Source: Ranitomeya imitator
Lineage: Eukaryota
Assembly (NCBI RefSeq): GCF_032444005.1
Contig: NC_091286.1
Coordinates: 24,242,001 to 24,306,000 of the forward strand
DNA: 64,000 nucleotides
Reading direction: 5' to 3'
Below, one piece after another: positions 12,528 through 63,912 of the stretch. The position numbers and the translations under genes were made by a program. Below the pieces are notes generated by a model. The model was given only the letters and a program-made list of their open reading frames with translations. It searched no databases and was not told the origin of the DNA. Position 1 is the first letter of the stretch. Every line of letters begins with the position of its first letter.

Positions 12528-15500
12528 GTGTCTCTTGCTATAGAGTGTCTCTTGCTGTGGAGTGTCTCTTGCTGTGGAGTGTCTCTTGCTGTGGAGTGTC
12601 TCTGGCTCTGGAGCGTCTCTTGCTCTGGAGTGTCTCTTGCTCTGGAGCGTCTCTCACTATGGAGCGTCTCTTGCTGTGGAGCATCTCTTTCTCTGGAGTG
12701 TCTCTCGCTGTGGAGTGTCTCTTGCTGTGGAGTGTCTCTTGCTGTAGAGTGTCTCTTGCTGTAGAGCATATCTTGCTGTGGAGCGTCTCTTGCTGTGGAG
12801 TGTCTCTTGCTGTGGAGTGTCTCTTGCTGTGGAGTGTCTTTGGCTCTGGAGTGTCTCTTGCTATGGAGTGCCTCTTGCTCTGGAGTGTCTCTTGCTGTGG
12901 AGTGTCTCTGGCTCTGGAGCGTCTCTTGCTCTGGAGTGTCTCTTGCTGTGGAGTGTCTTTGGCTCTGGAGTGTCTCTGGCTCTGGAGCGTCTCTTGCTGT
13001 GGAGTGTCTCTGGCTCTGGAGCGTCTCTTGCTCTGGAGCGTCTCTTGCTGTGGAGCGTCTCTCGCTGTGGAGCGTCTCTTGCTGTGGAGTGTCTCTGGCT
13101 CTGTAGCGTCTCTTGCTGTGGAGTGTCTCTTGCTGTGGAGTGTCTCTGGCTCTGTAGCGTCTCTTGCTGTGGAGTGTCTCTTGCTGTGGAGTGTCTCTTG
13201 CTGTGGAGTGTCTATGGCTCTGTAGCGTCTCTTGCTGTGGAGTGTCTCTCGCTGTGGAGCGTCTCTTGCTGTGGAGCATCTCTTGCTATGGAGTGTCTCT
13301 GGCTCTGGAGCGTCTCTTGCTGTGGAGTGTCTCTGGCTTTGGAGCGTCTCTTGCTCTGGAGTGTCTCTCGCTGTGGAGCGTCTCTTGCTGTGGAGTGTCT
13401 CTTGCTGTGGAGCGTCTCTTGCTGTGGAGTGTCTCTTGCTCTGGAGCGTCTCTCGCTGTGGAGCGTCTCTTGCTGTGGAGTGTCACTTGCTCTGGAGCGT
13501 GGCGTCTCTTGCTATGGAGTGTCTCTTGCTGTGGAGTGTCTCTTGCTGTGGAGTGTCTCTTGCTGTGGAGTGTCTCTTGCTGTGGAGCGTCTCTGGCTCT
13601 GGAGCGTCTCTCGCTGTGGAGCGTCTCTTGCTGTGGAGTGTCTCTTGCTGTGGAGTGTCTCGTGCTCTGGAGCGTCTCTTGCTGTGGAGTGTCTCTTGCT
13701 GTGGAGTGTCTCGTGCTCTGGAGCGTCTCTTGCTGTGGAGTGTCTCTGGCTTTGGAGCATCTCTTGCTCTGGTGCGTGACGTCTCTTGCTGTAAAGGGTC
13801 TCTGGCTCTGGAGCATCTCTTGCTGTGGAGCGTCTCTGGCTCTGGAGCATCTCTTGCTGTGGAGCGTCTCTGGCTCTGGAGCGTCTCTGGCTCTGGAGCG
13901 TCTCTCGCTGTGGAGCGTCTCTTGCTGTGGAGTGTCTCTTGCTGTGGAGCGTCTCTCGCTGTGGAGCATCTCTTGCTGTGGAGCGTCTCTTGCTGTGGAG
14001 TGTCTCGTGCTCTGGAGCGTCACTTGCTGTGGAGTGTCTCTGGCTTTGAAGCATCTCTTGCTCTGGTGCGTGATGTCTCTTGCTGTAAAGGGTCTCTGGC
14101 TCTGGAGCATCTCTTGCTCTGGAGTGTCTCTGGCTCTGGAGCGTCTCTTGCTCTGGAGCGTCTCTTGCTATGGAGCGTCTCTCGCTGTGGAGCGTCTCTC
14201 GCTGTGGAGTGTCTCTTGCTGTGGAGCGTCTCTTGCTGTGGAGTGTCTCGTGCTCTGGAGCGTCTCTTGCTGTGGAGCGTCTCTCGCTGTGGAGCGTCTC
14301 TTGCTGTGGAGTGTCTCTTGCTGTGGAGTGTCTCTGGCTGTGGAGTGTCTCTGGCTGTGGAGTGTCTCTGGCTCTGGAGCGTCTCTTGCTGTGGAGTGTC
14401 TCTGGCTCTGGAGCGACTCTTGCTGTGGAGCATCTCTCGCTGTGGAGCGTCTCTTGCTGTGGAGTGTCTCTTGCTGTGGAGTGTCTCTGGCTGTGGAGTG
14501 TCTCTTGCTCTGGAGTGTCTCTTGCTCTGGAGCGTCTCTCGCTGTGGAGCGTCTCTTGCTCTGGAGCGTCTCTCGCTGTGGAGCGTCTCTCGCTCTGGAG
14601 TGTCTCTGGCTCTGTAGCGTCTCTTGCTCTGGAGTGTCTCTTGCTGTGGAGTGTCTCTTGCTCTGGAGTGTCTCTTGCTCTGGAGTGTCTCTTGCTGTGG
14701 AGTGTCTCTGGCTCTGTAGTGTCTCTTGCTGTGGAGTGTCTCTTGCTGTGGAGTGTCTCTGGCTCTGTAGCGTCTCTTGCTGTGGAGTGTCTCTTGCTGT
14801 GGAGTGCCTCTTGCTGTGGAGTCTCTATGGCTCTGTAGCGTCTCTTGCTGTGGAGTGTCTCTCGCTGTGGAGCGTCTCTTGCTGTGGAGCATCTCTTGCT
14901 ATGGAGTGTCTCTGGCTCTGGAGCGTCTCTTGCTGTGGAGTGTCTCTGGCTTTGGAGCGTCTCTTGCTCTGGAGTGTCTCTCGCTGTGGAGCGTCTCTTG
15001 CTGTGGAGTGTCTCTTGCTGTGGAGCGTCTCTTGCTGTGGAGTGTCTCTTGCTCTGGAGCGTCTCTCGCTGTGGAGCGTCTCTTGCTCTGGAGTGTCTCT
15101 TGCTCTGGAGCGTGACGTCTCTTGCTATGGAGTGTCTCTTGCTGTGGAGTGTCTCTTGCTGTGGAGTGTCTCTTGCTGTGGAGCGTCTCTGGCTCTGGAG
15201 CGTCTCTCACTGTGGAGCGTCTCTTGCTGTGGAGTGTCTCGTGCTCTGGAGCGTCACTTGCTGTGGAGTGTCTCTGGCTTTGAAGCATCTCTTGCTCTGG
15301 TGCGTGATGTCTCTTGCTGTAAAGGGTCTCTGGCTCTGGAGCGTCTCTTGCTCTGGAGCGTCTCTTGCTATGGAGCGTCTCTCGCTGTGGAGCGTCTCTC
15401 GCTGTGGAGTGTCTCTTGCTGTGGAGCGTCTCTTGCTGTGGAGCGTCTCTCGCTGTGGAGTGTCTCTTGCTGTGGAGCGTCTCTTGCTGTGGAGTGTCTC

Positions 15501-18500
15501 GTGCTCTGCAGCGTCTCTTGCTGTGGAGTGTCTCTGGCTCTGGAATGTCTCTCGCTGTGGAGCGTCTCTCGCTGTGGAGTGTCTCTGGCTCTGGAGCGTC
15601 TCTGGCTCTGGAGCGTCTCTCGCTGTGGAGCGTCTCTTGCTGTGGAGCCTCTCTTGCTGTGGAGTGTCTCGTGCTCTGCAGCGTCTCTTGCTGTGGAGTG
15701 TCTCTGGCTCTGGAGCGTCTCTTGCTATGGAGCGTCTCTTGCTGTGGAGTGTCTCTGGCTCTGGAGCGTCTCTTGCTGTGGAGTGTCTCTGGCTCTGGAG
15801 CGTCTCTTGCTGTGGAGTGTCTCTGGCTCTGGAGCGTCTCTCGCTGTGGAGCGTCTCTTGCTGTGGAGCGTCTCTTGCTGTGGAGTGTCTCTTGCTCTGG
15901 AGTGTCTCTGGCTCTGGAGCGTCTCTTGCTCTGGAGCGTCTCTTGCTATGGAGCGTCTCTCGCTGTGGAGCGTCTCTTGCTGTGGAGTGTCTCTTGCTGT
16001 GGAGCGTCTCTTGCTGTGGAGCGTCTCTCGCTGTGGAGTGTCTCTTGCTGTGGAGCGTCTCTTGCTGTGGAGTGTCTCGTGCTCTGCAGCGTCTCTTGCT
16101 GTGGAGTGTCTCTGGCTCTGGAGTGTCTCTCGCTGTGGAGCGTCTCTCGCTGTGGAGTGTCTCTGGCTCTGGAGCGTCTCTCGCTGTGGAGCGTCTCTTG
16201 CTGTGGAGTGTCTCTTGCTGTGGAGTGTCTCGTGCTCTGGAGCGTCTCTTGCTGTGGAGTGTCTCTTGCTGTGGAGTGTCTCGTGCTCTGGAGCGTCTCT
16301 TGCTGTGGAGTGTCTCTGGCTTTGGAGCATCTCTTGCTCTGGTGCGTGACGTCTCTTGCTGTAAAGGGTCTCTGGCTCTGGAGCATCTCTTGCTGTGGAG
16401 CGTCTCTGGCTCTGGAGCATCTCTTGCTGTGGAGCGTCTCTGGCTCTGGAGCGTCTCTGGCTCTGGAGCGTCTCTCACTGTGGAGCGTCTCTTGCTGTGT
16501 AGTGTCTCTTGCTGTGGAGTGTCTCGTGCTCTGGAGCGTCACTTGCTGTGGAGTGTCTCTGGCTTTGAAGCATCTCTTGCTCTGGTGCGTGATGTCTCTT
16601 GCTGTAAAGGGTCTCTGGCTCTGGAGCATCTCTTGCTCTGGAGTGTCTCTGGCTCTGGAGTGTCTCTCGCTGTGGAGCGTCTCTCGCTGTGGAGTGTCTC
16701 TGGCTCTGGAGCGTCTCTGGCTCTGGAGCGTCTCTCGCTGTGGAGCGTCTCTGGCTCTGGAGCGTCTCTCGCTGTGGAGTGTCTCTTGCTGTGGAGCGTC
16801 TCTTGCTGTGGAGCGTCTCTCGCTGTGGAGTGTCTCTTGCTGTGGAGCGTCTCTTGCTGTGGAGTGTCTCGTGCTCTGCAGCGTCTCTTGCTGTGGAGTG
16901 TCTCTCGCTGTGGAGCGTCTCTCGCTGTGGAGTGTCTCTGGCTCTGGAGCGTCTCTGGCTCTGGAGCGTCTCTGGCTCTGGAGCGTCTCTCGCTGTGGAG
17001 CCTCTCTTGCTGTGGAGTGTCTCGTGCTCTGCAGCGTCTCTTGCTGTGGAGTGTCTCTGGCTCTGGAGCGTCTCTTGCTATGGAGCGTCTCTTGCTGTGG
17101 AGTGTCTCTGGCTCTGGAGCGTCTCTTGCTGTGGAGTGTCTCTGGCTCTGGAGCGTCTCTCGCTGTGGAGCGTCTCTTGCTGTGGAGCGTCTCTTGCTGT
17201 GGAGTGTCTCTTGCTCTGGAGTGTCTCTGGCTCTGGAGCGTCTCTTGCTCTGGAGCGTCTCTGGCTCTGGAGCGTCTCTGGCTCTGGAGCGTCTCTCGCT
17301 GTGGACCCTCTCTTGCTGTGGAGTGTCTCGTGCTCTGCAGCGTCTCTTGCTGTGGAGTGTCTCTGGCTCTGGAGCGTCTCTTGCTATGGAGCGTCTCTTG
17401 CTGTGGAGTGTCTCTGGCTCTGGAGCGTCTCTTGCTGTGGAGTGTCTCTGGCTCTGGAGCGTCTCTCGCTGTGGAGCGTCTCTTGCTGTGGAGTGTCTCT
17501 TGCTGTGGAGTGTCTCTTGCTGTGGAGTGTCTCGTGCTCTGGAGCGTCACTTGCTGTGGAGTGTCTCTGGCTTTGGAGCATCTCTTCCTCTGGTGCGTGA
17601 CGTCTCTTGCTGTAAAGGGTCTCTGGCTCTGGAGCGTCTCTTGCTCTGGAGCGTCTCTTGCTATGGAGCGTCTCTCGCTGTGGAGCATCTCTTGCTGTGG
17701 ATTATCTCTTGCTGTGGATCGTCTCTTGCTCTGGAGTGTCTTTGGCTCTGGAGCGTCTCTCGCTGTGGAGCATCTCTTGCTGTGGAGCGTCTCTTGCTCT
17801 GGAGCGTCTCTTGCTGTGGAGTGTCTCTTGCTGTGGAGTGTCTCTCGCTGTGGAGCGTCTCTTGCTGTGGAGCGTCTCTTGCTGTGGAGTGTCTCGTGCT
17901 CTGGAGCGTCTCTCGCTGTGGAGCGTCTCTTGCTGTGGAGCGTCTCTTGCTGTGGAGTGTCTCGTGCTCTGGAGCGTCTCTTGCTGTGGAGTGTCTCTGG
18001 CTTTGGAGCATCTCTTGCTGTGGAGTGTCTCTGGCTCTGGAGCGTCTCTTGCTCTGGAGCGTCTCTCACTATGGAGCGTCTCTTGCTGTGGAGCGTCTCT
18101 TTCTCTGGAGCGTCTCTCGCTCTGGAGTGTCTCTTGCTGTGGAGTGTCTCTTGCTGTGGTGTGTCTCTTGCTGTGGAGTGTCTCTGGCTATGGAGCGTCT
18201 CTGGCTGTGTAGTGTCTCTGTCTGTGGACCATCTCTTGCTCTGGATCATCCCATCTTCTGGACCGTCCCTTGCTCTGGAGGAGTGTCTCTTGCTCTGGAT
18301 TATCCCTTACTTTGGAGCACTCCTTGCTCTGTAGAGTCTCTTGTTCTGGACTGTCCCTTGCTCTGGAACGTCCCTTGCTCAGGAATGTCATTTGGTCTGG
18401 AACACCACTTGCTCTGGAGTGTCTCTTGCTCTGGAACGTCTCTTGCTCTGGAACGTTTCATGCTCTGGAATGTCTCTTGCTCTGGAGTGTCACTTGCTCT

Positions 18501-19554
18501 GGAGCATCTCTTGCTCTGGAATGTCTCTTGCTCTGGAACTCCACGTGCTCTGGAGCGTCTCTTGCTCTGGAACGCCACTTGCTCTGGAGTGTATCTTGCT
18601 CTGGAACGTCTCTTGCTCTGGAACATCTCTTGCTCTGGAATGTCCCTTGCGGTGGAGCATCCCTTGCTCTGGAACGTCACTTGCTCTGGAGTGTCTCTTG
18701 CTCTGGAGTGTCTCTTGCTCTGGAACGTCTCTTGCTCTGGAGCATCTCTTGCTCTGGATTGTCTCTTGCTCTGGAACTTCTCTTGCTCTGGAGCATCTCT
18801 TGCTCTGGAACGTCTCTTGCTCTGGAGCATCTCTTGCTCTGGAACATCTCTTACTCTGGAACGTCTCTTGCTCTGGAATGTCTCTTGCTCTGGAGCGTCT
18901 CTTGCTCTGGAGCATCTCTTGCTCTGGAACGTCTCTTGCTCTGGAGCATCTCTTGCTCTGGAGCATCTCTTGCTCTGGAATGTCTCTTGCTCTGGAGCAT
19001 CTCTTGCTCTGGAACATCTCTTGCTCTGGAACGTCTTTTGCTCTGGAATGTCTCTTGCTCTGGAACGTCTCTTGCTCTGGAGCATCTCTTGCTCTGGAAC
19101 ATCTCTTGCTCTGGAACGTCTTTTGCTCTGGAATGTCTCTTGCTCTGGAATGTCTCTTGCTCTGGAACGTCTCTTGCTCTGGAGCGTCTCTTGCTCTGGA
19201 ACGTCTCTTGTTCTGGAGTGTCTCTTGCTCTGGAGCATCTCTTGCTCTGGAACATCTCTTGCTCTGGAGCATCTCTTGCTCTGGAGCATCTCTTGCTCTG
19301 GAACGTCTCTTGCTCTGGAGCGTCTCTTGCTCTGGAACGTCTCTTGTTCTGGAGTGTCTCTTGCTCTGGAGCATCTCTTGCTCTGGAACATCTCTTGCTC
19401 TGGAGCATCTCTTGCTCTGGAGCATCTCTTGCTCTGGAACGTCTCTTGCTCTGGAGTGTCTCTTGCTCTGGAATGTCTCTTGCTCTGGAGTGTCTCTTGC
19501 TCTGGAACGTCCCTTGCTCTGGAGCACTTCTTGCTGTGGAGCGTCCCTTGCTCT
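12528..19554. repeat. 7-kb 17-bp satellite (TGTCTCTTGCTGTGGAG and variants)
   Basis: About 410 copies. The 17-aa period of the ORFs (51 nt = 3 units) confirms a 17-nt unit. The consensus has no stop on the + strand. Confidence 0.97.
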
Positions 19555-20339
19555 AAACACCATTGACACCCTATAATTGTTAATGGGCACCATGTAACAC
19601 TACATTTCCCCCATGGAGGCGCAGCAGGGGAACGTAACACTTACTGCCGGGTTCCTGCAGCTGATGGCTTGGGGTTTCAGCACCAAGACAAGCAAATTAG
19701 GGGATCCTTCTGAGATGATTTGTCGTAGGGGCTGCACAATCCCGCTAATATCTTGATATGCTGGATTTGGTCTTTCCAGGGTAAATTCAGCTTGTTTATT
19801 AGAACATTTCCTTTGGGAATATTTCTTTTCCTTTTCTTCACATATCAGATGATGATCAGGAATGTTTCTCCAACTCTGTGTGGACCAAGCAGATGACACT
19901 GACCTCATTACCCTGGAAGGTACGGTCCGCCATACGTCCCCCGGAGTAGAGGCACAGACTGGTGACCAGAAGATGCCGAAAATTCACGTTAAGGAAAACT
20001 AATAGGTGCGGTTCTGGTCAGGAGAAAACATACAGCGGAGGGGCCCGGACATGCGGGGCCAAAGCCCACCGTGCTGCTTCTCTCACTGCTCAAACTCTCA
20101 CAGCTGCTTTTGGACGCTGTGTACTTGTGCAGCACCAACCCACTGTCCAGATGGTACAGCATACTGGATGGGATTTCTAGAAACGCCATGACCACTATGG
20201 ATCCATAGACACCCGCGGCTCACCCGCGGAGACGGACATACGGCGCGTCTCTCCAGACTGCAGCATGTCAATTTCTCTTGTGGAGACACATACGGTCTCT
20301 AGATCACCAAGGGATCAAAAGCAAATCTACCATTAATCT

Positions 20340-29950: not shown

Positions 29951-31338
29951 TACATGTCTTTATAGGATCTAGAACGCTACAAGGTCACATACATCTGACC
30001 AATCTTGAGATCTTGAAAATGGTGAAAATATTAATTTTCTATTTTGTTTCCTCTTTAATTTCTATGGGGTTTTCATCTTTCCTTTTTTTTTTGGTTTTCG
30101 GAAGAAGGGGAGAAAAGAAAAACAGCTTTTTTTTAAAATTCTTCTGCTGATACAATTGTATCCAGTAACCTATAAGCTGCACAGATCTGGTTCGCTACAA
30201 TGTATCAGTCTGCAGTCTGGGGCTGTTTCGCTGATAGTGTAGAAAAGTTAGGATTGTTTCACCTTTCATCAGGACCAGGGTAAGATACAGGTTATAGTTT
30301 AACGTTTCCATTCACTGACAGCAAGCGGTATTTTTTTTTTTTACAGTATATTTCATAGTTGTGGCGTATATTGTATTGCTGGAGCCTGGTGTGTGGATAG
30401 TGGACCGGGCTGCGATCATCGGAGAATAGACGATGAAGCGATCGTTGCTATTTTAATGATACAAGCTATAATAAACCCAAATCTGCGGTGAGTCAGCGCT
30501 TCCCACTCGTATGGAGACATGTAAAATGAAAACCATCCGCACGCGAGCCGCCGCTTCATACATGAGCTCATCCACATTCTTACATAAGAGCGCGGCTGCC
30601 GCCGGGGGTCTCGTACATTCGATCCTGATGTCTCTCAGCGAGCGAATCACGGAAAATTCATCACTTTCTTCTTTTTACCCCTGGGACCTGGGGAGGGGGG
30701 TTAAAGGTTAAAGAAAACAATAAAATCTGGGTCTGGAAAATCAGCCCTTTGGGAACGTGCGCAGAAATCCTCGATGAACCTCAAAATAAGCCCTGTCCAA
30801 AAATTAGGGGGCGGAAAAAAAAGACAAAAGTCAGGTGTGGACGTATCAAATGTGCCACCGAGGCAGCAGCACAGGGGCCCCTGAAGATAAGGGGGTCACT
30901 GTCTCTTTAAAAGAAACTTCCTGCTATCTTTAAGATTCCTGGAAGGCGAAGAGCTAATCTCACAACTACTACCCATAGGGGGCGCTCTGTAGAACGGACA
31001 TATTCTGTGCTTGTAGGACCCGTCCGCGGCTTGTGGTGGGCCTCGACCGTAGTGTTATAGCATTGGGGACAGCCACAGTCTCACCTGCAGGAATCAGAAA
31101 ACTTCAGCTGTGAAACTGCAGCTTCAAACATGCAACACATGGCTTTCAGTGATTGCTGGGAGTTGTAGTCTTGAGATGAAATAAAAAGTTTGTCTGGGAC
31201 TTTGTTTATATATTTTTCCGACTTTTTTTTTTGCCCAATTTTTGTTTTTTTTTTGTCCTTTTTCCATTCTTCTACTTTCTACTTCTGGATTTCTCTTTTT
31301 TTTGTTCGTCGTTGTAGGCGATGATTGGGGTTTTGTGA

Positions 31339-32549
31339 AGTCATTGGACGTGGTATATCTCGATTTTTCCAAAGCGTTTGATACCGTGCCGCACAAGAGG
31401 TTGGTACACAAAATGAGAATGCTTGGTCTGGGGGAAATTGTGTGTAAATGGGTTAGTAACTGGCTTAGTGATAGAAAGCAGAGGGTGGTTATAAATGGTA
31501 TAGTCTCTAACTGGGTCGCTGTGACCAGTGGGGTACCGCAGGGGTCAGTATTGGGACCTGTTCTCTTCAACATATTCATTAATGATCTGGTAGAAGGTTT
31601 ACACAGTAAAATATCGATATTTGCAGATGATACAAAACTATGTAAAGCAGTTAATACAAGAGAAGATAGTATTCTGCTACAGATGGATCTGGATAAGTTG
31701 GAAACTTGGGCTGAAAGGTGGCAGATGAGGTTTAACAATGATAAATGTAAGGTTATACACATGGGAAGAAGGAATCAATGTCACCATTACACACTGAACG
31801 GGAAACCACTGGGTAAATCTGACAGGGAGAAGGACTTGGGGATCCTAGTTAATGATAAACTTACCTGGAGCAGCCAGTGCCAGGCAGCAGCTGCCAAGGC
31901 AAACAGGATCATGGGGTGCATTAAAAGAGGTCTGGATACATATGATGAGAGCATTATACTGCCTCTGTACAAATCCCTAGTTAGACCGCACATGGAGTAC
32001 TGTGTCCAGTTTTGGGCACCGGTGCTCAGGAAGGATATAATGGAACTAGAGAGAGTACAAAGGAGGGCAACAAAATTAATAAAGGGGATGGGAGAACTAC
32101 AATACCCAGATAGATTAGCGAAATTAGGATTATTTAGTCTAGAAAAAAGACGACTGAGAGGCGATCTAATAACCATGTATAAGTATATAAGGGGACAATA
32201 CAAATATCTCGCTGAGGATCTGTTTATACCAAGGAAGGTGACGGGCACAAGGGGGCATTCTTTGCGTCTGGAGGAGAGAAGGTTTTTCCACCAACATAGA
32301 AGAGGATTCTTTACTGTTAGGGCAGTGAGAATCTGGAATTGCTTGCCTGAGGAGGTGGTGATGGCGAACTCAGTCGAGGGGTTCAAGAGAGGCCTGGATG
32401 TCTTCCTGGAGCAGAACAATATTGTATCATACAATTAGGTTCTGTAGAAGGACGTAGATCTGGGGATTTATTATGATGGAATATAGGCTGAACTGGATGG
32501 ACAAATGTCTTTTTTCGGCCTTACTAACTATGTTACTATGTTACTATGT
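31339..32549 (+). mobile_element. CR1 LINE, 5'-truncated (RT domain to 3' end)
   Basis: Open frame YLDFSKAFD...GVPQGSVLGP...FADDTKL...to the stop at 32438, then a 3'UTR and (TTACTATG)n tail typical of CR1. Confidence 0.95.
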
Positions 32550-45149: not shown

Positions 45150-45456
45150 TAATGGCGCGCGTGCGTGTTCCAGTGCAGCGCTCAGTTTCCAGCCGGCCGT
45201 TCTCTGCATTTGTCTGTAGTTACCGCTATTGACCACTAGAGGGAGAGAAGCCTCCTCGCTATAGAGGCCACCGATGAAAGACACTCCATTCGTGCCAAGA
45301 TGATAGAGTTCCCTGCGCCCCGGAAGTGTTCGTCTGTGATTGGTGGGAGGTCGTATAAACAGCCAATTAGAGCGCTGGCTCGTGTTTCCTGCGAGTGCTG
45401 ATGTGTGCTCCCGGCTTCCCTGCCTCTAGCACCACAGTGACCGGCGCGGCTCCATC
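45150..45456 (+). promoter_or_regulatory. SRP9 promoter / 5'UTR within a CpG island
   Basis: CpG-rich from about 45150 into intron 1. ETS/GABP-like CCGGAAGTG at 45320-45328, inverted CCAAT at 45338-45343, TATAAA at 45354-45359, CCAAT at 45363-45367, NRF1-like GCGCGCGTGCG at 45155-45165, CTCF-like CCACTAGAGGGAG at 45233-45245. Motif function is inferred. Confidence 0.75.
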
Positions 45457-45528
45457 ATGCCTTACTACCGCACCTGGGAGGAGTTCACCCGGGCCGCCGA
45501 GAAGCTCTACCAGGCCGACCCCATGAAG
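45457..45528 (+). CDS. SRP9: Signal recognition particle 9 kDa protein, coding exon 1 ([24 protein letters not shown])
   Basis: ATG in CCATCATGC context. Matches the vertebrate SRP9 N-terminus (human [24 protein letters not shown]). Phase-0 donor AAG|GTGAGT. Confidence 0.97.
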
Positions 45529-46228
45529 GTGAGTGCGCAGCCGGGTGACTCTGCGGGCGGTGACTGCGCGCCTTCCTCCTGTAGGAGCTCTGTTATCTGT
45601 CAGTGAATGAAATGGACACTTGTCACGTGGGATTCAGCTGCAGAATCTGCCTGGTCCGGATCCGCCGCTGGGATCACTGTCTGCGGAGACCTGATCTCTC
45701 CTGGATCCCGCGCTCTGTCCCCTGCGGACAGGCTCCATTCATTGGGGGCTGGCACTAAACTGTAACCCCCAATGTTCTGTACCGGGGGAAGCCCCTGTAT
45801 AGTGTCGGCCATCACTCTCTCCTGTGGGCGGCATTCCACGGTCTGACTGCTGTAACTGCAGAGAACCCTTTCCCTGTGTAGCTGCGGAATCTCCTTCCTT
45901 CCTTCCCCCAGTGATGGTGCCCCTGGTCCCGTAGAATAATCGAGTTGCCGCCTTTGAACTAACGCCACAATCTCCTTATTAAAACCTGGATCCTGTATTC
46001 TAGATGTCACAATATGTTGGGCTTTTACCTCTTCTTACACACCCTGAAATCTCTTGTAGGCTTTTGCAGCTGCTGCCTGACACTGAGCGCTGCTGCTCCG
46101 CTTACTTGTACCCAGGATCCCCGTCCTTCTCCTGTTCCGTAGTCCTGCGTATTCTCCCACTTATAAATCTGCAGCTATAGGATTACTCCGTCCTGGGTGG
46201 ATCACTCTACATTTATCTACAGTAAACC

Positions 46229-47956
46229 ACGAGGCTGAAGTTGGTTTCTTATTCGGCAATTTTTTCTTTTGTTTTTTTATAGGTTTAACAAAAAAAAAAA
46301 AAAAGAATCATCACAATAATAAAAGACAATGCAGTGAGGAGCCCTGATGTGAATACGCTTAAAACGGCTACAAAAACAATAACACTGGCACAAAAATGGG
46401 CATCAAAGAGCGCTGAAGAAAGGGTTAAATGCCTTTTGGGCCACTGATCTCACAGTGCAGACATATAAGAACAGGGCGCCCCACATCCAAACCAGTTATT
46501 TCCAGCCTGGCCCAAATGGGTTCTGGGCATCAGAACTGGCATCAAAGTGGGCACACAGTCAATTTTGGCCATTTGAATAAGTAACTGATGTTTTTAAGAA
46601 GTTAAATGCCTTTGGGCCACTGATACCAGTGCGTACATATAGAACAGGGAGCCCCACATCAAAAACAGGTCCCTTCAGCCTGGCCCAAATGGGTACTGGG
46701 CATCAGAACTGGTATCAAAGTGGGCACACCCCATTTTCACACATTTGAATAAGTAACTGATGTTTTTAAGGGGTTAAATGCCATTGGGCCACTGATCTGA
46801 CACTTAAAATACACAGATATCGATGCCCAGCATCAAACCCAGGTCCTCCAGCCTGGCCCATATAGGTTTTGGAAGAAAGAACCTGGCACTGAACTTAATG
46901 CTTGGCTACTACGATTAAAATCTCACAAGCATTAAGTTGAGTGCCAGGTTCTTCTAGTATCACATGGTGTGGGAACCTACCTGGGCACCACTAGTAGTAG
47001 TGCACACGGCTTTCTTTCAAATAGGTTTTGGGCAGCAGAACTGGCATCAAAGTGGGCACACAGCCCACTTTCACACATTTGAATAAGTAACTGATGTTTT
47101 TAAGGGGTTAAATGCTCTTGGGCCACTAATCTGACACAAAATACAGACCGTGATGCCCTGCATCAAACCCAGGTCCCTCCAGCCTGGCCCAAATGGGTTC
47201 TTGGCACCAGAATTGGCATCAAAGTGGGCACACAGCCCATTTTCACGGATTTAAATAAGTAACTGATGTTTTTAAGGGGTTAAATGCCTTTGGGCCACTG
47301 ATCTGACTCTTAAAATACAGACAGTGATGCCCTGCATCAATCCCAGGTCCCTGCAGGGCATCACTGTCTGTGTATTTTAAGTGGCCCAAATGCATGTAAC
47401 CCCTTAAAAACATCAGTTACTTAATCAAATCTGTGAAAATGGGCTGTTTGCCCACTTTGATGCCAGTTCTGATGCACAGAACCCATTTGGGCCATGCTGG
47501 AGGAACCTGCGTTTGATGCAGGGCATCAATATCTGTGTATTTTAAGTGTCAGATCAGTGGCCCAAAGGCATGTAACCCCTTAAAATCATCAGTTACTTAT
47601 TCAAATAGCCACAATTGCCTGTTTGCCCACTTTGATGCCAGTCCTGATGCCCAGAACCCATTTGGGCCAGGCTGGAAATAACAGGTTTGGATTTGGGGCG
47701 CCCTGTTCTTATATGTATGCAGTGTGAGATCAGTGGCCCAAAGGCATTTAATCCTTTCTTCAGCGCTCTTTGGTGCCCACTTTGATGCCCATTTTTGTGC
47801 CAGTTTTATTGTTTTTGTAGCCGTTTTTAAGCGTACTCTCATCAGGGCACCTCACTGCATTGTCTTTTATTATTGTGGTGATTATTTTTTTGTTAAACCT
47901 ATAAAAAAAACAGAAAAGAAGAAAAATGGCGAATAAGAAACCAACTTCAGCCTCGT
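46229..47956. mobile_element. Foldback (MULE/FB-type) non-autonomous DNA transposon, 1728 bp, in SRP9 intron 1
   Basis: Termini ACGAGGCTGAAGTTGGTTTCTTATTCG / CGAATAAGAAACCAACTTCAGCCTCGT. Perfect 9-bp TSD CAGTAAACC (46220-46228 and 47957-47965). Arms 46229-47336 and 47352-47956 are built from ~180-bp tandem units around a 15-nt loop. Confidence 0.88.
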
Positions 47957-49731
47957 CAGTAAACCTCACTTGCTATTCTCCTCCCTGCGCTGTCTGTACG
48001 CTGTGCACAGTGACAGTGCCCGTTCTCTTGTTGCCTCAAAGCTGCAGATCAGAGCCCACAACACAGCGATGTGCAGGAGATCAGCGTCACCCCTGCAGGT
48101 GACATCGTTATTCTCTGCTGGGTTTGTGACACGGCCGTGTTGCCGACTCATTACTGCAGATTTGAGACAACGAGAGCTGTCATTGTGCACATCTCACAGT
48201 ATACAGGGACCAACCTCACCCCTGAAATCAGTGTCACCGATGACTGTTCATTTCAGAAAGGGGACAGAGATTGTGACCCTCTGCCACCATTATGCTTCGT
48301 TTGAGTTTCCCAGCATGCACTGGGGGCTCTCAAAATGTCATCAGTCTATATAAGTTTTTTTTTTTGTTTGTATTTTTTTTCCTTCTTTCTGTAACAGTTG
48401 GTGTATTTGAAAATAGCTTAATTCTGACATCAAACAGATGGGGAGTTAGCTAAAATTCACTTCTGTCTTCAGACGTCCCTTTTAAAGGGATTGTCCACTA
48501 CTGCAGGACACCATCCTAAATGCCTCCAGTGGGCAAGAGGAAAACCCAATGCTGATCTCCAAGACCAGTGCTTCTGTATTGTCTGCAATACCCCCCCTGC
48601 TGTGCAGAAGTCCCTCAACCTCATTGGGGGGGCTGCGGCTGGCTGTAGGGGGCGCTGCTGGCAGGGAAGAAGATAGAAGGATATACTAGCAGTCTGGGCA
48701 GCAGGAGGTCGCCTCCACATCTGAGTGGCCTTGTATTATGTATGCAGCTCTTATACTGAGCTCCTTGTTTCTATGGTTACAGACTATAAACAAACCTTGT
48801 CGTCTGATCCTGTCCTCTCCCGTTCAGTTTCCTCTTCCTCCTTTACTAGAATATTCTCATTCACTGACAGCAAGCAGAGATATACAGATGGCGAGAAAGC
48901 AAAGCACATAAGAAAGTTGCGGAACTTCTGCTTCTTGTCCGGTATTCTCTGCGACTGAATATTCAGTGTCGGCCGTCTGCTAATGCCACTATATTATTAT
49001 AGAAGGGTTATAATTTTCTAGTTGCCGTGGTGACTAGGCATGCATGAGGTCTGTGGATGGCTATTACATTACTCAGCAAGTTAGACCTTTTAAGGGTCTA
49101 ATGCAGAACTCGTCTCCAAAGCTTAAGTGCACCCCCTTCCGTGTTTTTTTTTTTTTTTTTTCCCCTGAACATAAATGGTAAAAACTAGAACATGTAGTAT
49201 TGCAGTGTGCAGTTGCCCAATCTGGTATAAACCTATTTATCCCATATGCCGTAAAGGAAAAATCGAGACACAGGAATTGAACGTCTTTTGGTTTGAGATT
49301 CTTAAACAAAAAATACTTTTTTTTTTTTTTTTGAGCACCGCACGGTGGCTGTTCTCGGGTACTGCAGTCAGATCACACTTTCTTCAATACCTGAGAGCGG
49401 CCACTAAGCTGCGCTCTTCTACTCCACAGTCGGCCTCTATCTACACACATCCAGCGGGGTCTCGGCTTGGTCTGGGACTCTCCACGGTGGTCAATTCCTG
49501 CTTGTTGGAAGGGTCCTTTAAAAATAAGCTGATCCCACGTGGCCCCTTGGCTGGGAATCCCCAGCAATCCGTCCCTAAGTGTTCGGTTACCCCTTAAGCA
49601 TTAACATTGGGATTAGATGGCGGGGGCCGTAGATTTCCATGGTTCTGGATGACACTGTAGGGAAGGTTGCAGCCACCAGTCTCCGACCAGTGCCAGGACT
49701 AACACTTCACTGGTTGCTGTTTCCTCCACAG

Positions 49732-49800
49732 GCGCGAGTGACGCTGAAGTACAGACACTGCGATGGGACTTTACGTATGAAAGTCACAGATGACGTAGTG
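49732..49800 (+). CDS. SRP9: SRP9 coding exon 2 (ARVTLKYRHCDGTLRMKVTDDVV)
   Basis: Acceptor TTCCTCCACAG|G, donor GTG|GTGAGT, 69 nt, phase 0-0. Matches human [23 protein letters not shown]. Confidence 0.97.
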
Positions 49801-52190: not shown

Positions 52191-52310
52191 TGTTTGCTGT
52201 ACAGCACGGATCAGGCGCAGGACGTGAAGAAGATCGAGAAGTTCCACAGTCAGCTGATGCGACTAATGGTGGCGAGGGAATCCCGCAGCTCCGCCATGGA
52301 AACTAACTGA
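52191..52310 (+). CDS. SRP9: SRP9 coding exon 3 ([39 protein letters not shown])
   Basis: Acceptor TTCTTTTTCCTCTTCTCCAG|T. Contains the near-invariant [21 protein letters not shown]. The join 45457-45528 + 49732-49800 + 52191-52310 gives 86 aa, the same length as human SRP9. Confidence 0.97.
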
Positions 52311-60108: not shown

Positions 60109-62100
60109 GTAACATAGTAACATAGTTAGTAAGGCCGAAAAAAGACATTTGTCCATCCAGTTCAGCCTATATTCCATCATAATAAATCCCCAGATCTACG
60201 TCCTTCTACAGAACCTAATAATTGTATGATACAATATTGTTCTGCTCCAGGAAGACATCCAGGCCTCTCTTGAACCCCTCGACTGAGTTCGCCATCACCA
60301 CCTCCTCAGGCAAGCAATTCCAGATTCTCACTGCCCTAACAGTAAAGAATCCTCTTCTATGTTGGTGGAAAAACCTTCTCTCCTCCAGACGCAAAGAATG
60401 CCCCCTTGTGCCCGTCACCTTCCTTGGTATAAACAGATCCTCAGCGAGATATTTGTATTGTCCCCTTATATACTTATACATGGTTATTAGATCGCCCCTC
60501 AGTCGTCTTTTTTCTAGACTAAATAATCCTAATTTCGCTAATCTATCTGGGTATTGTAGTTCTCCCATCCCCTTTATTAATTTTGTTGCCCTCCTTTGTA
60601 CTCTCTCTAGTTCCATTATATCCTTCCTGAGCACCGGTGCCCAAAACTGGACACAGTACTCCATGTGCGGTCTAACTAGGGATTTGTACAGAGGCAGTAT
60701 AATGCTCTCATTATGTGTATCCAGACCTCTTTTAATGCACCCCATGATCCTGTTTGCCTTGGCAGCTGCTGCCTGGCACTGGCTGCTCCAGGTAAGTTTA
60801 TCATTAACTAGGATCCCCAAGTCCTTCTCCCTGTCAGATTTACCCAGTGGTTTCCCGTTCAGTGTGTAATGGTGACATTGATTCCTTCTTCCCATGTGTA
60901 TAACCTTACATTTATCATTGTTTAACCTCATCTGCCACCTTTCAGCCCAAGTTTCCAACTTATCCAGATCCATCTGTAGCAGAATACTATCTTCTCTTGT
61001 ATTAACTGCTTTACATAGTTTTGTATCATCTGCAAATATCGATATTTTACTGTGTAAACCTTCTACCAGATCATTAATGAATATGTTGAAGAGAACAGGT
61101 CCCAATACTGACCCCTGCGGTCCCCACTGGTCACAGCGACCCAGTTAGAGACTATACCATTTATAACCACCCTCTGCTTTCTATCACTAAGCCAGTTACT
61201 AACCCATTTACACACATTTTCCCCCAGACCAAGCATTCTCATTTTGTGTACCAACCTCTTGTGCGGCACGGTATCAAACGCTTTGGAAAAATCGAGATAT
61301 ACCACGTCCAATGACTCACCGTGGTCCAGCCTATAGCTTACCTCTTCATAAAAACTGATTAGATTGGTTTGACAGGAGCGATTTCTCATAAACCCATGCT
61401 GATATGGAGTTAAACAGTTATTCTCATTGAGATAATCCAGAATAACATCCCTCAGAAACCCTTCAAATATTTTACCAACAATAGAGGTTAGACTTACTGG
61501 CCTATAATTTCCAGGTTCACTTTTAGAGCCCTTTTTGAATATTGGCACCACATTTGCTATGCGCCAATCCTGCGGAACAGACCCCGTCGCTATAGAGTCA
61601 CTAAAAATAAGAAATAATGGTTTATCTATAACATTACTTAGTTCTCTTAGTACTCGTGGGTGTATGCCATCCGGACCCGGAGATCTATCTATTTTAATCT
61701 TATTTAGCCGGTTTCCGCACCTCTTCTTGGGTTAGATTGGTGACCCTTAATATAGGGTTTTCATTGTTTCTTGGGATTTCACCTAGCATTTCATTTTCCA
61801 CCGTGAATACCGTGGAGAAGAAGGTGTTTAATATGTTAGCTTTTTCCTCGTCATCTACAACCATTCTTTCCTCACTATTTTTTAAGGGGCCTACATTTTC
61901 AGTTTTTATTCTTTTACTATTGATATAGTTGAAGAACAGTTTGGGATTAGTTTTACTCTCCTTAGCAATGTGCTTCTCTGTTTCCTTTTTGGCAGCTTTA
62001 ATTAGTTTTTTAGATAAAGTATTTTTCTCCCTATAGTTTTTTAGAGCTTCAATGGTGCCATCCTGCTTTAGTAGTGCAAATGCTTTCTTTTTACTGTTAA
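60109..62100 (-). mobile_element. CR1 LINE, 5'-truncated, ORF2 with two 1-nt frameshifts
   Basis: Minus-strand ORF segments 61700-62146, 61063-61551 and 60215-61105 (PIFKKG..PGNYRPVSLTS, QHGF, YLDFSKAFD, FADD). Tail (TTACTATG)n at 60109-60130. Frameshifts near 61120 and 61715. Confidence 0.95.
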
Positions 62101-62318: not shown

Positions 62319-63912
62319 CAGTGGGGCAAAAAAGTATTTAGTCAGTCAGCAATAGTGCAAGTTCCACCACTTAAAAAGATGAGAGGCGTCTGTAATTTAC
62401 ATCATAGGTAGACCTCAACTATGGGAGACAAACTGAGAAAAAAAAATCCAGAAAATCACATTGTCTGTTTTTTTAACATTTTATTTGCATATTATGGTGG
62501 AAAATAAGTATTTGGTCAGAAACAAACAATCAAGATTTCTGGCTCTCACAGACCTGTAACTTCTTCTTTAAGAGTCTCCTCTTTCCTCCACTCATTACCT
62601 GTAGTAATGGCACCTGTTTAAACTTGTTATCAGTATAAAAAGACACCCGTGCACACCCTCAAACAGTCTGACTCCAAACTCCACTATGGTGAAGACCAAA
62701 GAGCTGTCAAAGGACACCAGAAACAAAATTGTAGCCCTGCACCAGGCTGGGAAGACTGAATCTGCAATAGCCAACCAGCTTGGAGTGAAGAAATCAACAG
62801 TGGGAGCAATAATTAGAAAATGGAAGACATACAAGACCACTGATAATCTCCCTCGATCTGGGGCTCCACGCAAAATCCCACCCCGTGGGGTCAGAATGAT
62901 CACAAAAATCCCAGAACCACGCGGGGGGACCTAGTGAATGAACTGCAGAGAGCTGGGACCAATGTAACAAGGCCTACCATAAGTAACACACTACGCCACC
63001 ATGGACTCAGATTCTGCAGTGCCAGACGTGTCCCACTGCTTAAGCCAGTACATGTCCGGGCCCGTCTGAAGTTTGCTAGAGAGCATTTGGATGATCCAGA
63101 GGAGTTTTGGGAGAATGTCCTATGGTCTGATGAAACCAAACTGGAACTGTTTGGTAGAAACACAACTTGTCGTGTTTGGAGGAAAAAGAATACTGAGTTG
63201 CATCCATCAAACACCATACCTACTGTAAAGCATGGTGGTGGAAACATCATGCTTTGGGGCTGTTTCTCTGCAAAGGGGCCAGGACGACTGATCCGGGTAC
63301 ATGAAAGAATGAATGGGGCCATGTATCGTGAGATTTTGAGTGCAAACCTCCTTCCATCAGCAAGGGCATTGAAGATGAAACGTGGCTGGGTCTTTCAACA
63401 TGACAATGATCCAAAGCACACCGCCAGGGCAACGAAGGAGTGGCTTCGTAAGAAGCATTTCAAGGTCCTGGAGTGGCCTAGCCAGTCTCCAGATCTCAAC
63501 CCTATAGAAAACCTTTGGAGGGAGTTGAAAGTCCGTGTTGCCAAGCGAAAAGCCAAAAACATCACTGCTCTAGAGGAGATCTGCATGGAGGAATGGGCCA
63601 ACATACCAACAACAGTGTGTGGCAACTTTGTGAAGACTTACAGAAAACGTTTGACCTCTGTCATTGCCAACAAAGGATATATTACAAAGTATTGAGATGA
63701 AATTTTGTTTCTGACCAAATACTTATTTTCCACCATAATATGCAAATAAATTGTTAAAAAAACAGACAATGTGATTTTCTGGATTTTTTTTTTCTCAGTT
63801 TGTCTCCCATAGTTGAGGTCTACCTATGATGTAAATTACAGACTCCTCTCATCTTTTTAAGTGGTGGAACTTGCACTATTGCTGACTGACTAAATACTTT
63901 TTTGCCCCACTG
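62319..63912 (+). mobile_element. Tc1 (DD34E) transposon, near full length (1594 bp), ~210-bp TIRs
   Basis: CAGTGGGGCAAAAAAGTATTTAGTCAGTC... / ...GACTGACTAAATACTTTTTTGCCCCACTG. TA on the left, TG on the right. The TIRs differ at only about 2 positions that I could see. Confidence 0.96.
62686..63695 (+). pseudogene. Tc1 transposase, frameshifted once
   Basis: HTH N-terminus (MVKTKELSKD...GAPRKIP) in ORF 62686-62934. The rest is in ORF 62934-63695 with [15 protein letters not shown] and SPDLNPIEN, 34 residues between the second D and the E. Frameshift near 62905. Confidence 0.9.

What the first reader, a model, noticed from the sequence alone, without database searches (positions are those of the whole stretch)
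46220..47965. Foldback transposon with a perfect 9-bp TSD and modular 180-bp arms in SRP9 intron 1
The whole 1728-bp element is one asymmetric hairpin: left arm 1108 bp, 15-nt loop (47337-47351), right arm 605 bp. Each arm has a ~190-bp terminal domain plus tandem ~180-bp units (about 4 and a partial on the left, 2 and a partial on the right). A 9-bp TSD with long TIRs made of internal tandem repeats is the signature of Foldback/MULE-type elements, best known from Drosophila FB and plants. I do not recognise this family in amphibians. There is no transposase. In the pre-mRNA of an essential gene it would form several hundred bp of dsRNA, a likely ADAR substrate, and in DNA it could extrude a cruciform.
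Basis: partly seen in the sequence, partly recalled or inferred. Interest (0 to 1): 0.7.

Follow-up and report, generated by a model that had tools for sequence, protein, structure and literature searches.

The report
Non-coding foldback transposon in frog SRP9 intron
This is a real but ordinary relic of a non-coding, hairpin-shaped "foldback" jumping gene. It belongs to a very abundant repeat family in a poison-frog genome, sits in the first intron of the SRP9 gene and is spliced out normally.

Summary
A 1,728-bp element (46229-47956) has exact 27-bp inverted ends and an exact 9-bp duplication (CAGTAAACC). Each arm is a ~191-bp terminal domain followed by 172-176-bp tandem units: 4 plus a partial unit on the left, 2 plus a partial on the right. 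The arms meet at a 15-nt loop.

What I added:
- Two LINE copies elsewhere in the window act as empty sites. They align without gaps across the junction and carry the 9-mer once, so this is a true insertion with a true target duplication.
- cDNA contigs confirm that it lies in SRP9 intron 1 (45529-49731), which is spliced normally.
- Short-read contigs of another haplotype and a cDNA run confirm the junctions.
- About 6,000 contigs in each of two species match the element, so the family is very abundant.

Best reading: a non-autonomous foldback-type cut-and-paste transposon, probably Mutator-like (inferred from the 9-bp duplication). Its layout matches Drosophila Tetris/FB. Earlier notes of this scan record foldback elements in this genome, among them a transposase-carrying NOF-type one. 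I found no evidence of RNA editing. Verdict: a new member of a known kind, of low to moderate interest.

The parts
46220..46228 (.). Left copy of the 9-bp target site duplication, CAGTAAACC
   Evidence: The 9-mer is present once in the paralogous LINE copies that align across the junction.
46229..47956 (.). The whole foldback element: 1,728 bp, non-coding
   Evidence: No ORF longer than 81 aa. No Rfam family at gathering score.
46229..46255 (+). Left terminal inverted repeat core, 27 bp, an exact reverse complement of 47930-47956
   Evidence: two matches in the window, 0 expected by chance.
46229..46419 (+). Left terminal (flanking) domain, ~191 bp. It contains an A15 tract at 46290-46304 and two motifs 12 bp apart at 46387 and 46399.
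   Evidence: about 88% identical to the right terminal domain. for the A15 tract.
46420..46767 (+). Left-arm tandem units L1 (46420-46595) and L2 (46596-46767)
   Evidence: L1 is 93% identical to its mirror unit R1.
46768..47101 (+). Unit L3, interrupted (46768-46872 plus 47032-47101)
   Evidence: With the insertion removed, L3 is 175 bp long and 91% identical to R2.
46873..47017 (.). Nested 145-bp insertion of another repeat family, flanked by a 14-bp duplication (46859-46872 CATATAGGTTTTGG; 47018-47031 CAAATAGGTTTTGG)
   Evidence: Five uninterrupted units serve as empty sites, and both duplicate copies share two derived bases. Other copies of the inserted piece appear in runs X3 and X13.
47102..47336 (+). 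Units L4 (47102-47273) and the partial L5 (from 47274), ending in the left half of the central stem
47337..47351 (.). 15-nt loop at the turn of the hairpin
   Evidence: perfect 22-bp stem, 47315-47336 with 47352-47373.
47352..47757 (-). Right-arm units: R3 partial (47352-47405), R2 (47406-47581), R1 (47582-47757)
47758..47956 (-). Right terminal domain, including the 27-bp end (47930-47956) and three motifs 12 bp apart at 47777, 47789 and 47801
   Evidence: (family D5)
47957..47965 (.). Right copy of the 9-bp target site duplication
45782..47973 (-). Host of the insertion: an antisense, 5'-truncated LINE reverse-transcriptase fragment (45782-46228 plus 47966-47973), split by the element
   Evidence: It aligns with the reverse-transcriptase ORFs at 31242-32435 (+) and 60218-61105 (-).
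45529..49731 (+). SRP9 intron 1 (4,203 bp, GT..AG). The element makes up 41% of it.
   Evidence: the 45528 to 49732 joint in runs X3 and X13. for the exons. Transcript 5' ends lie at about 45370-45372, marked by template-switch oligo loose ends.

Best explanation
This is a non-autonomous, foldback-type cut-and-paste DNA transposon and is now a decayed relic. A copy of a very abundant poison-frog repeat family was excised elsewhere and integrated into a LINE fragment in SRP9 intron 1. A transposase supplied in trans made a 9-bp staggered cut at the target, and repair of that cut produced the CAGTAAACC duplication. The 9-bp length and the architecture point to a Mutator-like (MULE, NOF/Phantom-type) enzyme; this step is inferred, not shown. 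The transposase would recognise the conserved 27-bp ends. It probably also binds the short motif that recurs, often in pairs 12 bp apart, in the terminal domain and in every 173-bp unit. The unequal unit numbers in the two arms would arise by unequal exchange or replication slippage, and the same units probably also build satellite-like arrays. At this locus the element has no demonstrated function: it is transcribed as part of the intron and spliced out.
For: Shown:
- Exact 9-bp duplication and exact 27-bp inverted ends.
- The flanks joined with a single copy of the 9-mer align without gaps to two LINE paralogues in the window. This holds at DNA level (214 nt) and at protein level (QVRFTVDKCRVIH against QMRFNNDKCKVIH) and in frame across both junctions. 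So it is an insertion and the 9-mer is a target duplication.
- Terminal domain plus 172-176-bp tandem units in both arms. Mirror units are more alike (L1-R1 93%, L3-R2 91%) than neighbours within an arm (77-87%).
- No ORF above 81 aa.
- 5,919 contigs in organism A and 6,226 in organism B were laid on the stretch. Summed depth in the units is about 10^5 against about 8 in unique flank. Joints among these contigs show copies with fewer units, more units and other turn-round points.
- Contigs carrying a different haplotype (shared differences at 45654, 45655, 45892 and 45958) cross the left junction in runs X1 and X3, and the right junction in X1.

Supporting:
- The 27-bp ends and the duplication are perfect while the arms are only 91% alike (P about 0.04 if the divergence were uniform). 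This suggests the arms had diverged before insertion and the ends were kept by selection for transposition.
- A 10-nt motif occurs 13 times in the element against 3 times in the remaining 62 kb, both strands counted.

Literature:
- 9-bp duplications with composite foldback repeats mark MULE/Phantom elements (PMC3169594).
- Tetris has the same layout of flanking domain plus ~220-bp repeats with 8-10-bp duplications (PMC4079207).
- FB4 is argued to be a MULE on the same grounds (PMC8277862).
Against: - Only one copy could be examined, so I cannot say whether the duplication length is constant across the family.
- No autonomous partner with matching ends was reachable. Linking this element to the NOF-type element noted elsewhere in the genome is a guess.
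- Merlin elements also make 8-9-bp duplications.
- The ends show no recognised superfamily signature that I could test.
- Transposase binding to the repeated motif is pure inference.
- The summed contig depth is not a copy number, as the tool itself warns.
Confidence: 0.75

Rival explanations
1. It is a non-autonomous DNA transposon of another superfamily (Merlin, with 8-9-bp duplications, or hAT/P-Galileo-like with long repeats) that evolved a foldback shape independently.
For: [quoted passage not shown] Only one duplication was measured. Earlier notes of this scan say this genome is rich in giant hAT elements.
Against: The duplication is exactly 9 bp. An 8-bp reading would leave the ends asymmetric. 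hAT (8 bp) and P/Galileo (7-8 bp) do not fit. From general knowledge, Merlin is not known for arms built of long tandem units.
Confidence: 0.15
2. It is a reverse-transcription product: a fold-back, two-strand-primed insertion of a multimeric non-coding repeat, of the kind earlier notes describe for Penelope-like or retrozyme elements in this genome.
For: Earlier notes of this scan (s1-288126, s1-288107) describe fold-back multimers with duplications in this genome. Here too both outer ends are the same base of the same sequence.
Against: - Those insertions have 14-16-bp duplications and near-identical arms made only of monomers.
- Here the duplication is 9 bp.
- A unique 191-bp terminal domain caps both arms.
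- The arms are 9% diverged while the ends are perfect.
- No hammerhead or other Rfam family was found at E<=1.
- The nested 145-bp piece, with its 14-bp duplication, shows in the same element what an insertion with a 14-bp duplication looks like.
Confidence: 0.05
3. It is not mobile: either a local inverted duplication or an assembly artefact of a tandem repeat.
For: No public contig spans the centre of the palindrome.
Against: - Both junctions are confirmed in contigs of another haplotype and in a cDNA run.
- Paralogous empty sites show a clean insertion with a target duplication.
- Thousands of related contigs occur in two species.
Confidence: 0.03

Closest known systems
Tetris (and its relative DAIBAM), a foldback transposon of Drosophila virilis (PMC4079207)
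   Same: It is non-coding and its long inverted arms have an outer flanking domain followed by a variable number of ~220-bp tandem repeats. Part of the repeat unit resembles the flanking domain; here 46386-46413 resembles the units at 68-82% (family D6). Duplications are 8-10 bp. The units are also far more abundant than the ends, which suggests satellite-like arrays.
   Different: There is no sequence relationship. The host is a vertebrate. The unit is 172-176 bp. There is no middle domain: the arms meet at a 15-nt loop.
Drosophila FB / FB4-NOF and the Phantom subclass of Mutator, including Tm1 of root-knot nematodes (PMC3169594, PMC8277862)
   Same: 9-bp target duplication. Composite inverted repeats of unequal length, built from tandem subrepeats. 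MITE-like non-coding members are mobilised in trans.
   Different: The subrepeats here are much longer (173 bp, against 10-31 bp in FB from general knowledge and 13-15 bp, mostly 14, in Tm1).
Xenopus MITEs that carry or seed tandem repeats: Xmix/Xstir and miDNA4 (reviewed in PMC9659126)
   Same: They are amphibian non-autonomous DNA transposons whose interior or arms hold tandem repeats that also form satellite DNA.
   Different: According to that review miDNA4 belongs to Tc1-mariner, and no superfamily is given for Xmix. A Tc1-mariner element makes a 2-bp TA target duplication (PMC8277862), not 9 bp.
Galileo (P superfamily) of Drosophila buzzatii (PMC3688188)
   Same: Long foldback-like arms with internal tandem repeats that hold extra transposase-binding sites. 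This is the model for my inference about the repeated motif.
   Different: From general knowledge Galileo makes 7-bp duplications and encodes a THAP-type P transposase. Neither is seen here.

Membership tests
Foldback-type transposons (structural class) | Long inverted arms make up nearly the whole element, with little or no central domain | tested here: met
   Arms of 1,108 and 605 bp around a 15-nt loop. 705 base pairs form in the fold, and the outermost pair joins the two ends.
Foldback-type transposons (structural class) | Arms are built of tandem subrepeats whose number differs between arms and between copies | tested here: met
   4 plus a partial unit against 2 plus a partial unit, each 172-176 bp. 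Joints in contigs of other copies skip or repeat units.
Foldback-type transposons (structural class) | A target site duplication of fixed length flanks the insertion | tested here: inconclusive
   This copy has an exact 9 bp, verified against paralogous empty sites. No other copy could be retrieved, so constancy across the family is untested.
Mutator / MULE superfamily (NOF/Phantom branch) | 8-11-bp, mostly 9-bp, target duplication | tested here: met
   9 bp. Criterion as used in PMC3169594 and PMC4079207.
Mutator / MULE superfamily (NOF/Phantom branch) | An autonomous member with the same ends encodes a MULE DDE transposase | not testable with these tools
   There is no MULE ORF in the window. 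An earlier scan note (s1-294668) reports a NOF-type element in this genome, but its sequence is not readable here.
MITE (miniature inverted-repeat element) | Small size (a few hundred bp), non-coding, high copy number | tested here: not met
   It is non-coding and abundant, but at 1,728 bp it is too long to count as miniature.
Penelope-like / retrozyme fold-back retro-insertions | Hammerhead ribozyme motif and long (14-16 bp), variable target duplication | tested here: not met
   No hammerhead at E<=1 in 45900-48300. The duplication is 9 bp.
SRP9 gene (host locus) | Exons match the SRP9 family and are spliced together in RNA | tested here: met
   Exon 1 matches positions 2-20 and exon 3 positions 64-89 of Pfam SRP9-21. 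Both are below the cut-off because each piece was searched alone. The exon 1-2 joint and the exon 2-3 continuation appear in cDNA/RNA-type contigs.

The most novel reading that the evidence does not exclude
This copy belongs to a previously undescribed family of foldback MITEs mobilised by a NOF-type Mutator transposase. The family would have thousands of copies in at least two dendrobatid frogs, and its 173-bp arm unit would also be a major satellite. That would make poison frogs a vertebrate system for studying foldback transposition and the birth of satellites. A weaker extra: the intronic hairpin in a housekeeping gene could feed small-RNA or editing pathways.
Probability: 0.4. Interest if true: 0.4.

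Novelty: new member of a known kind. Interest (0 to 1): 0.25.

Why it matters
Foldback elements are well studied in Drosophila but little described in vertebrates. An abundant family shared by two frog species would be useful for annotating the repeat-rich poison-frog genomes, where de novo tools label many repeats 'Unknown'. It would also help in studying how transposon arms seed satellite DNA. In addition it provides many long intronic hairpins that could be tested for RNA editing or small-RNA production. By itself this single decayed copy has no demonstrated effect: SRP9 intron 1 is spliced normally.

Tried and rejected
1. Other copies inside the window: none for the ends, the units, the nested piece or the flanks.
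2. Fetching other copies through spurious ORFs. The 81-aa ORF of the right arm found no protein in the word-based search.
3. An exact 18-mer of the unit in metagenome contigs gave 19 hits, all chance matches of at most 31 nt.
4. Rfam at E<=1 returned only palindromic miRNA-like hits far below threshold, and no hammerhead.
5. Earlier findings searched by sequence: blank.
6. Literature search for the end and unit sequences found nothing. The two poison-frog genome papers do not mention MULE, Foldback or MITE.
7. ADAR editing: the cDNA-type runs show no A>G or T>C excess (X3: A>G 4, T>C 5 against C>T 9, G>A 6). Contigs of a multi-copy family cannot settle this.
8. An orthologous empty site in organism B: its contigs barely cover the unique flanks, so presence or absence there is unknown.
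10. My first Pfam query for exon 2 was one codon off (49729-49797 instead of 49732-49800), and I did not repeat it.
Full report
**Observation.**
- The nine bases CAGTAAACC stand at 46220-46228 and again at 47957-47965. The bases on either side differ, so the repeat is exactly 9 bp.
- Between them lie 1,728 bp whose first and last 27 bases are exact reverse complements. That 27-mer occurs nowhere else in the window, with 0 expected by chance.
- The outer 604/605 bp of the two sides align colinearly at 91% identity.
- Each side starts with a ~191-bp terminal domain, followed by tandem units of 172-176 bp (Tandem Repeats Finder periods 173 and 176; unit alignment).
- The left arm has units L1 to L4 plus a partial L5. 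The right arm has R1, R2 and a partial R3.
- As a single strand the element folds at -1113 kcal/mol against -454 +/- 13 for shuffles, with perfect helices of up to 39 bp.
- No ORF exceeds 81 aa and no Rfam family reaches its threshold.
- The description is therefore correct, apart from the unit length (about 173 bp, not 180) and one missed feature described below.

**It is a true insertion with a true target duplication.**
- The left flank is itself repetitive. It is an antisense, 5'-truncated fragment of a LINE, and two other copies of that LINE's reverse-transcriptase region lie in the window (31242-32435 on the + strand, 60218-61105 on the - strand; Pfam RVT_1).
- I joined the left flank, one copy of the 9-mer and the right flank. 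The result aligns without gaps to both LINE copies across the junction, over 214 nt of DNA.
- In translation the same reading frame runs through both junctions: QVRFTVDKCRVIH here against QMRFNNDKCKVIH in the LINE copies.
- The LINE fragment ends only 8 nt beyond the duplication, so the overlap on the right side is short. Even so, a 9/9 block straddles the junction and no three-codon surplus appears.
- This is a paralogous empty site. The 1,728 bp were inserted and the 9-mer was duplicated on insertion.

**Independent support from public reads.**
- Contigs of run X1 (organism A) cross the left junction (45300-46254) and the right junction (47930-48499).
- A contig of run X3 also crosses the left junction (45500-46254).
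- X1 and X3 share differences from the window at 45654, 45655, 45892 and 45958, so they represent another haplotype or individual. The insertion is therefore neither private to the assembly nor an artefact at its borders.
- All these contigs break 26-27 nt inside the element, where the exact inverted ends make short-read graphs branch.
- No contig spans the centre, so the unit count and the turn-round point rest on the assembly alone.

**Family.**
- 5,919 contigs of X1 and 6,226 contigs of X4 (a different species label, organism B) were laid on the 4.6-kb stretch at 85% likeness or more. Nearly all fall in the element.
- Summed depth in the units is about 10^5, against about 8 in the unique flank. 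The terminal domains reach about 10^4.
- The tool warns that these sums are not copy numbers. They do show a very abundant family in two species, with units about ten times more frequent than ends. That fits longer arrays in other copies or free satellite-like arrays.
- Joints among the contigs show copies that skip units, repeat units or turn round at other points. This is the variability expected of foldback arms.

**Internal logic of the arms.**
- Mirror units are more alike (L1-R1 93%, L3-R2 91%) than neighbours within an arm (77-87%). The multi-unit arm is therefore an inherited feature of the family, not a local amplification at this locus.
- The ends and the duplication are perfect while the arms differ by 9% (P about 0.04 under uniform divergence). 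This suggests the arms were already diverged when this copy inserted and that the ends are kept by selection for transposition.
- A 10-nt motif, GG[GC]A[CT][CA]A[GA]A[AG], occurs 13 times in the element and 3 times in the other 62 kb on both strands. It often comes in pairs 12 bp apart, both in the terminal domain and in the units.
- By analogy with Galileo (PMC3688188) and the argument made for Tetris (PMC4079207), these are candidate transposase-binding sites. That is inference only.

**Mechanism and class.**
- The simplest account is a non-autonomous cut-and-paste transposon moved in trans.
- From general knowledge of the eukaryotic superfamilies, a 9-bp duplication fits Mutator-like elements (8-11 bp) and, less well, Merlin (8-9 bp). 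It does not fit hAT, P, Tc1, piggyBac, Harbinger or Kolobok.
- A 9-bp duplication combined with composite foldback arms is the published signature of FB/Phantom-type MULEs (PMC3169594, PMC4079207, PMC8277862).
- I therefore put about 0.55 on a MULE/NOF-type transposase and about 0.85 on a TIR DNA transposon of some kind.
Other notes (s1-294750, s1-294757) report further foldback elements with satellite-like arms. Whether any shares ends with this copy could not be tested here.

**Rival: a retro-type fold-back.**
- Earlier notes describe many Penelope-style fold-back multimers in this genome. They have 14-16-bp duplications and arms made only of monomers.
- This element differs in four ways: a 9-bp duplication, a unique terminal domain on both arms, diverged arms with perfect ends, and no ribozyme.
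- The element carries its own contrast. Unit L3 is split by a 145-bp piece (46873-47017) flanked by a 14-bp duplication (46859-46872 and 47018-47031). The two copies match at 13 of 14 positions and share two derived bases. The five uninterrupted units carry that site once.
- The 145-bp piece is a separate repeat with other copies in X3 and X13 contigs. Its long duplication suggests a different, probably reverse-transcription-based, insertion route.

**Gene context.**
- SRP9 lies on the + strand: exon 1 CDS at 45457-45528, intron 1 at 45529-49731 (GTGAGT...CAG), exon 2 at 49732-49800, and exon 3 from 52191 to the stop codon at 52308-52310.
- Exon 1 and exon 3, searched alone, match the two ends of Pfam SRP9-21 below its cut-off.
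- Contigs of X3 and X13 join 45528 to 49732, and an X13 contig continues from 49800 into the first bases of exon 3.
- X3 is a cDNA library: template-switch oligo sequence abuts the genome at about 45370-45372, which marks the transcript start.
- The element fills 41% of intron 1 and does not prevent splicing.
- One X3 contig runs unspliced from exon 1 to the element's left end, so the left arm at least is transcribed. Its high depth may come from internal oligo-dT priming on the element's A15 tract (46290-46304), which is my inference.
- The cDNA-type contigs show no A>G excess. Contigs of a multi-copy family cannot test editing, so the ADAR idea remains open and unsupported.

**Novelty.**
- The architecture matches Tetris almost point for point: an outer flanking domain, ~200-bp tandem repeats partly derived from it, 8-10-bp duplications, no ORF, and units that also behave like a satellite.
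- Amphibian MITEs that carry or seed tandem repeats are known (Xmix/Xstir and miDNA4, PMC9659126).
- RepeatMasker classes for MULE-NOF are already applied to fish genomes (e.g. PMC4746887, seen in the search list only).
- The two poison-frog genome papers I checked do not mention such elements, and the sequence motifs appear in no paper searched. The family itself is probably undescribed by name.
- It is a new member of a known kind, and this scan has already met foldback elements elsewhere in this genome.

**Verdict.** The structure is real, neatly confirmed and ordinary. Interest is 0.25.

Noticed in passing
window 46859-47031: A 145-bp hairpin-containing repeat (46873-47017) is inserted in unit L3, flanked by a 14-bp target duplication. 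Copies of it occur in RNA-type contigs. The size and duplication length recall the tiny fold-back retro-insertions noted elsewhere in this genome, but Rfam found no hammerhead.
   Followed up: partly
window 45782-46228 and 47966-47973; 31242-32435 (+); 60218-61105 (-): There are three copies of one LINE family (Pfam RVT_1). The copy in SRP9 intron 1 is antisense and 5'-truncated, and it is the target of the foldback insertion.
   Followed up: partly
window 45370-45372 and 45500-46254: Template-switch oligo junctions in cDNA run X3 mark the SRP9 transcript start about 85 nt upstream of the ATG. An unspliced exon 1-intron 1 contig has a depth (185) similar to the spliced joint (148). This may come from internal oligo-dT priming at the element's A15 tract (46290-46304).
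   Followed up: no
window 13000-19600: A long block of strongly skewed, G+C-rich DNA (AT skew about -0.67) is open in several reading frames for up to 1,573 codons. It looks like a simple or tandem repeat rather than a gene.
   Followed up: no
window 62934-63692 (+): A Tc1-type transposase ORF (Pfam HTH_Tnp_Tc3_2 plus DDE_3).
   Followed up: no
window 48226-48379: Another highly repeated and transcribed short segment in SRP9 intron 1. Its summed depth is about 2,000 in the DNA runs and it has the highest depth of the stretch in cDNA run X3.
   Followed up: no
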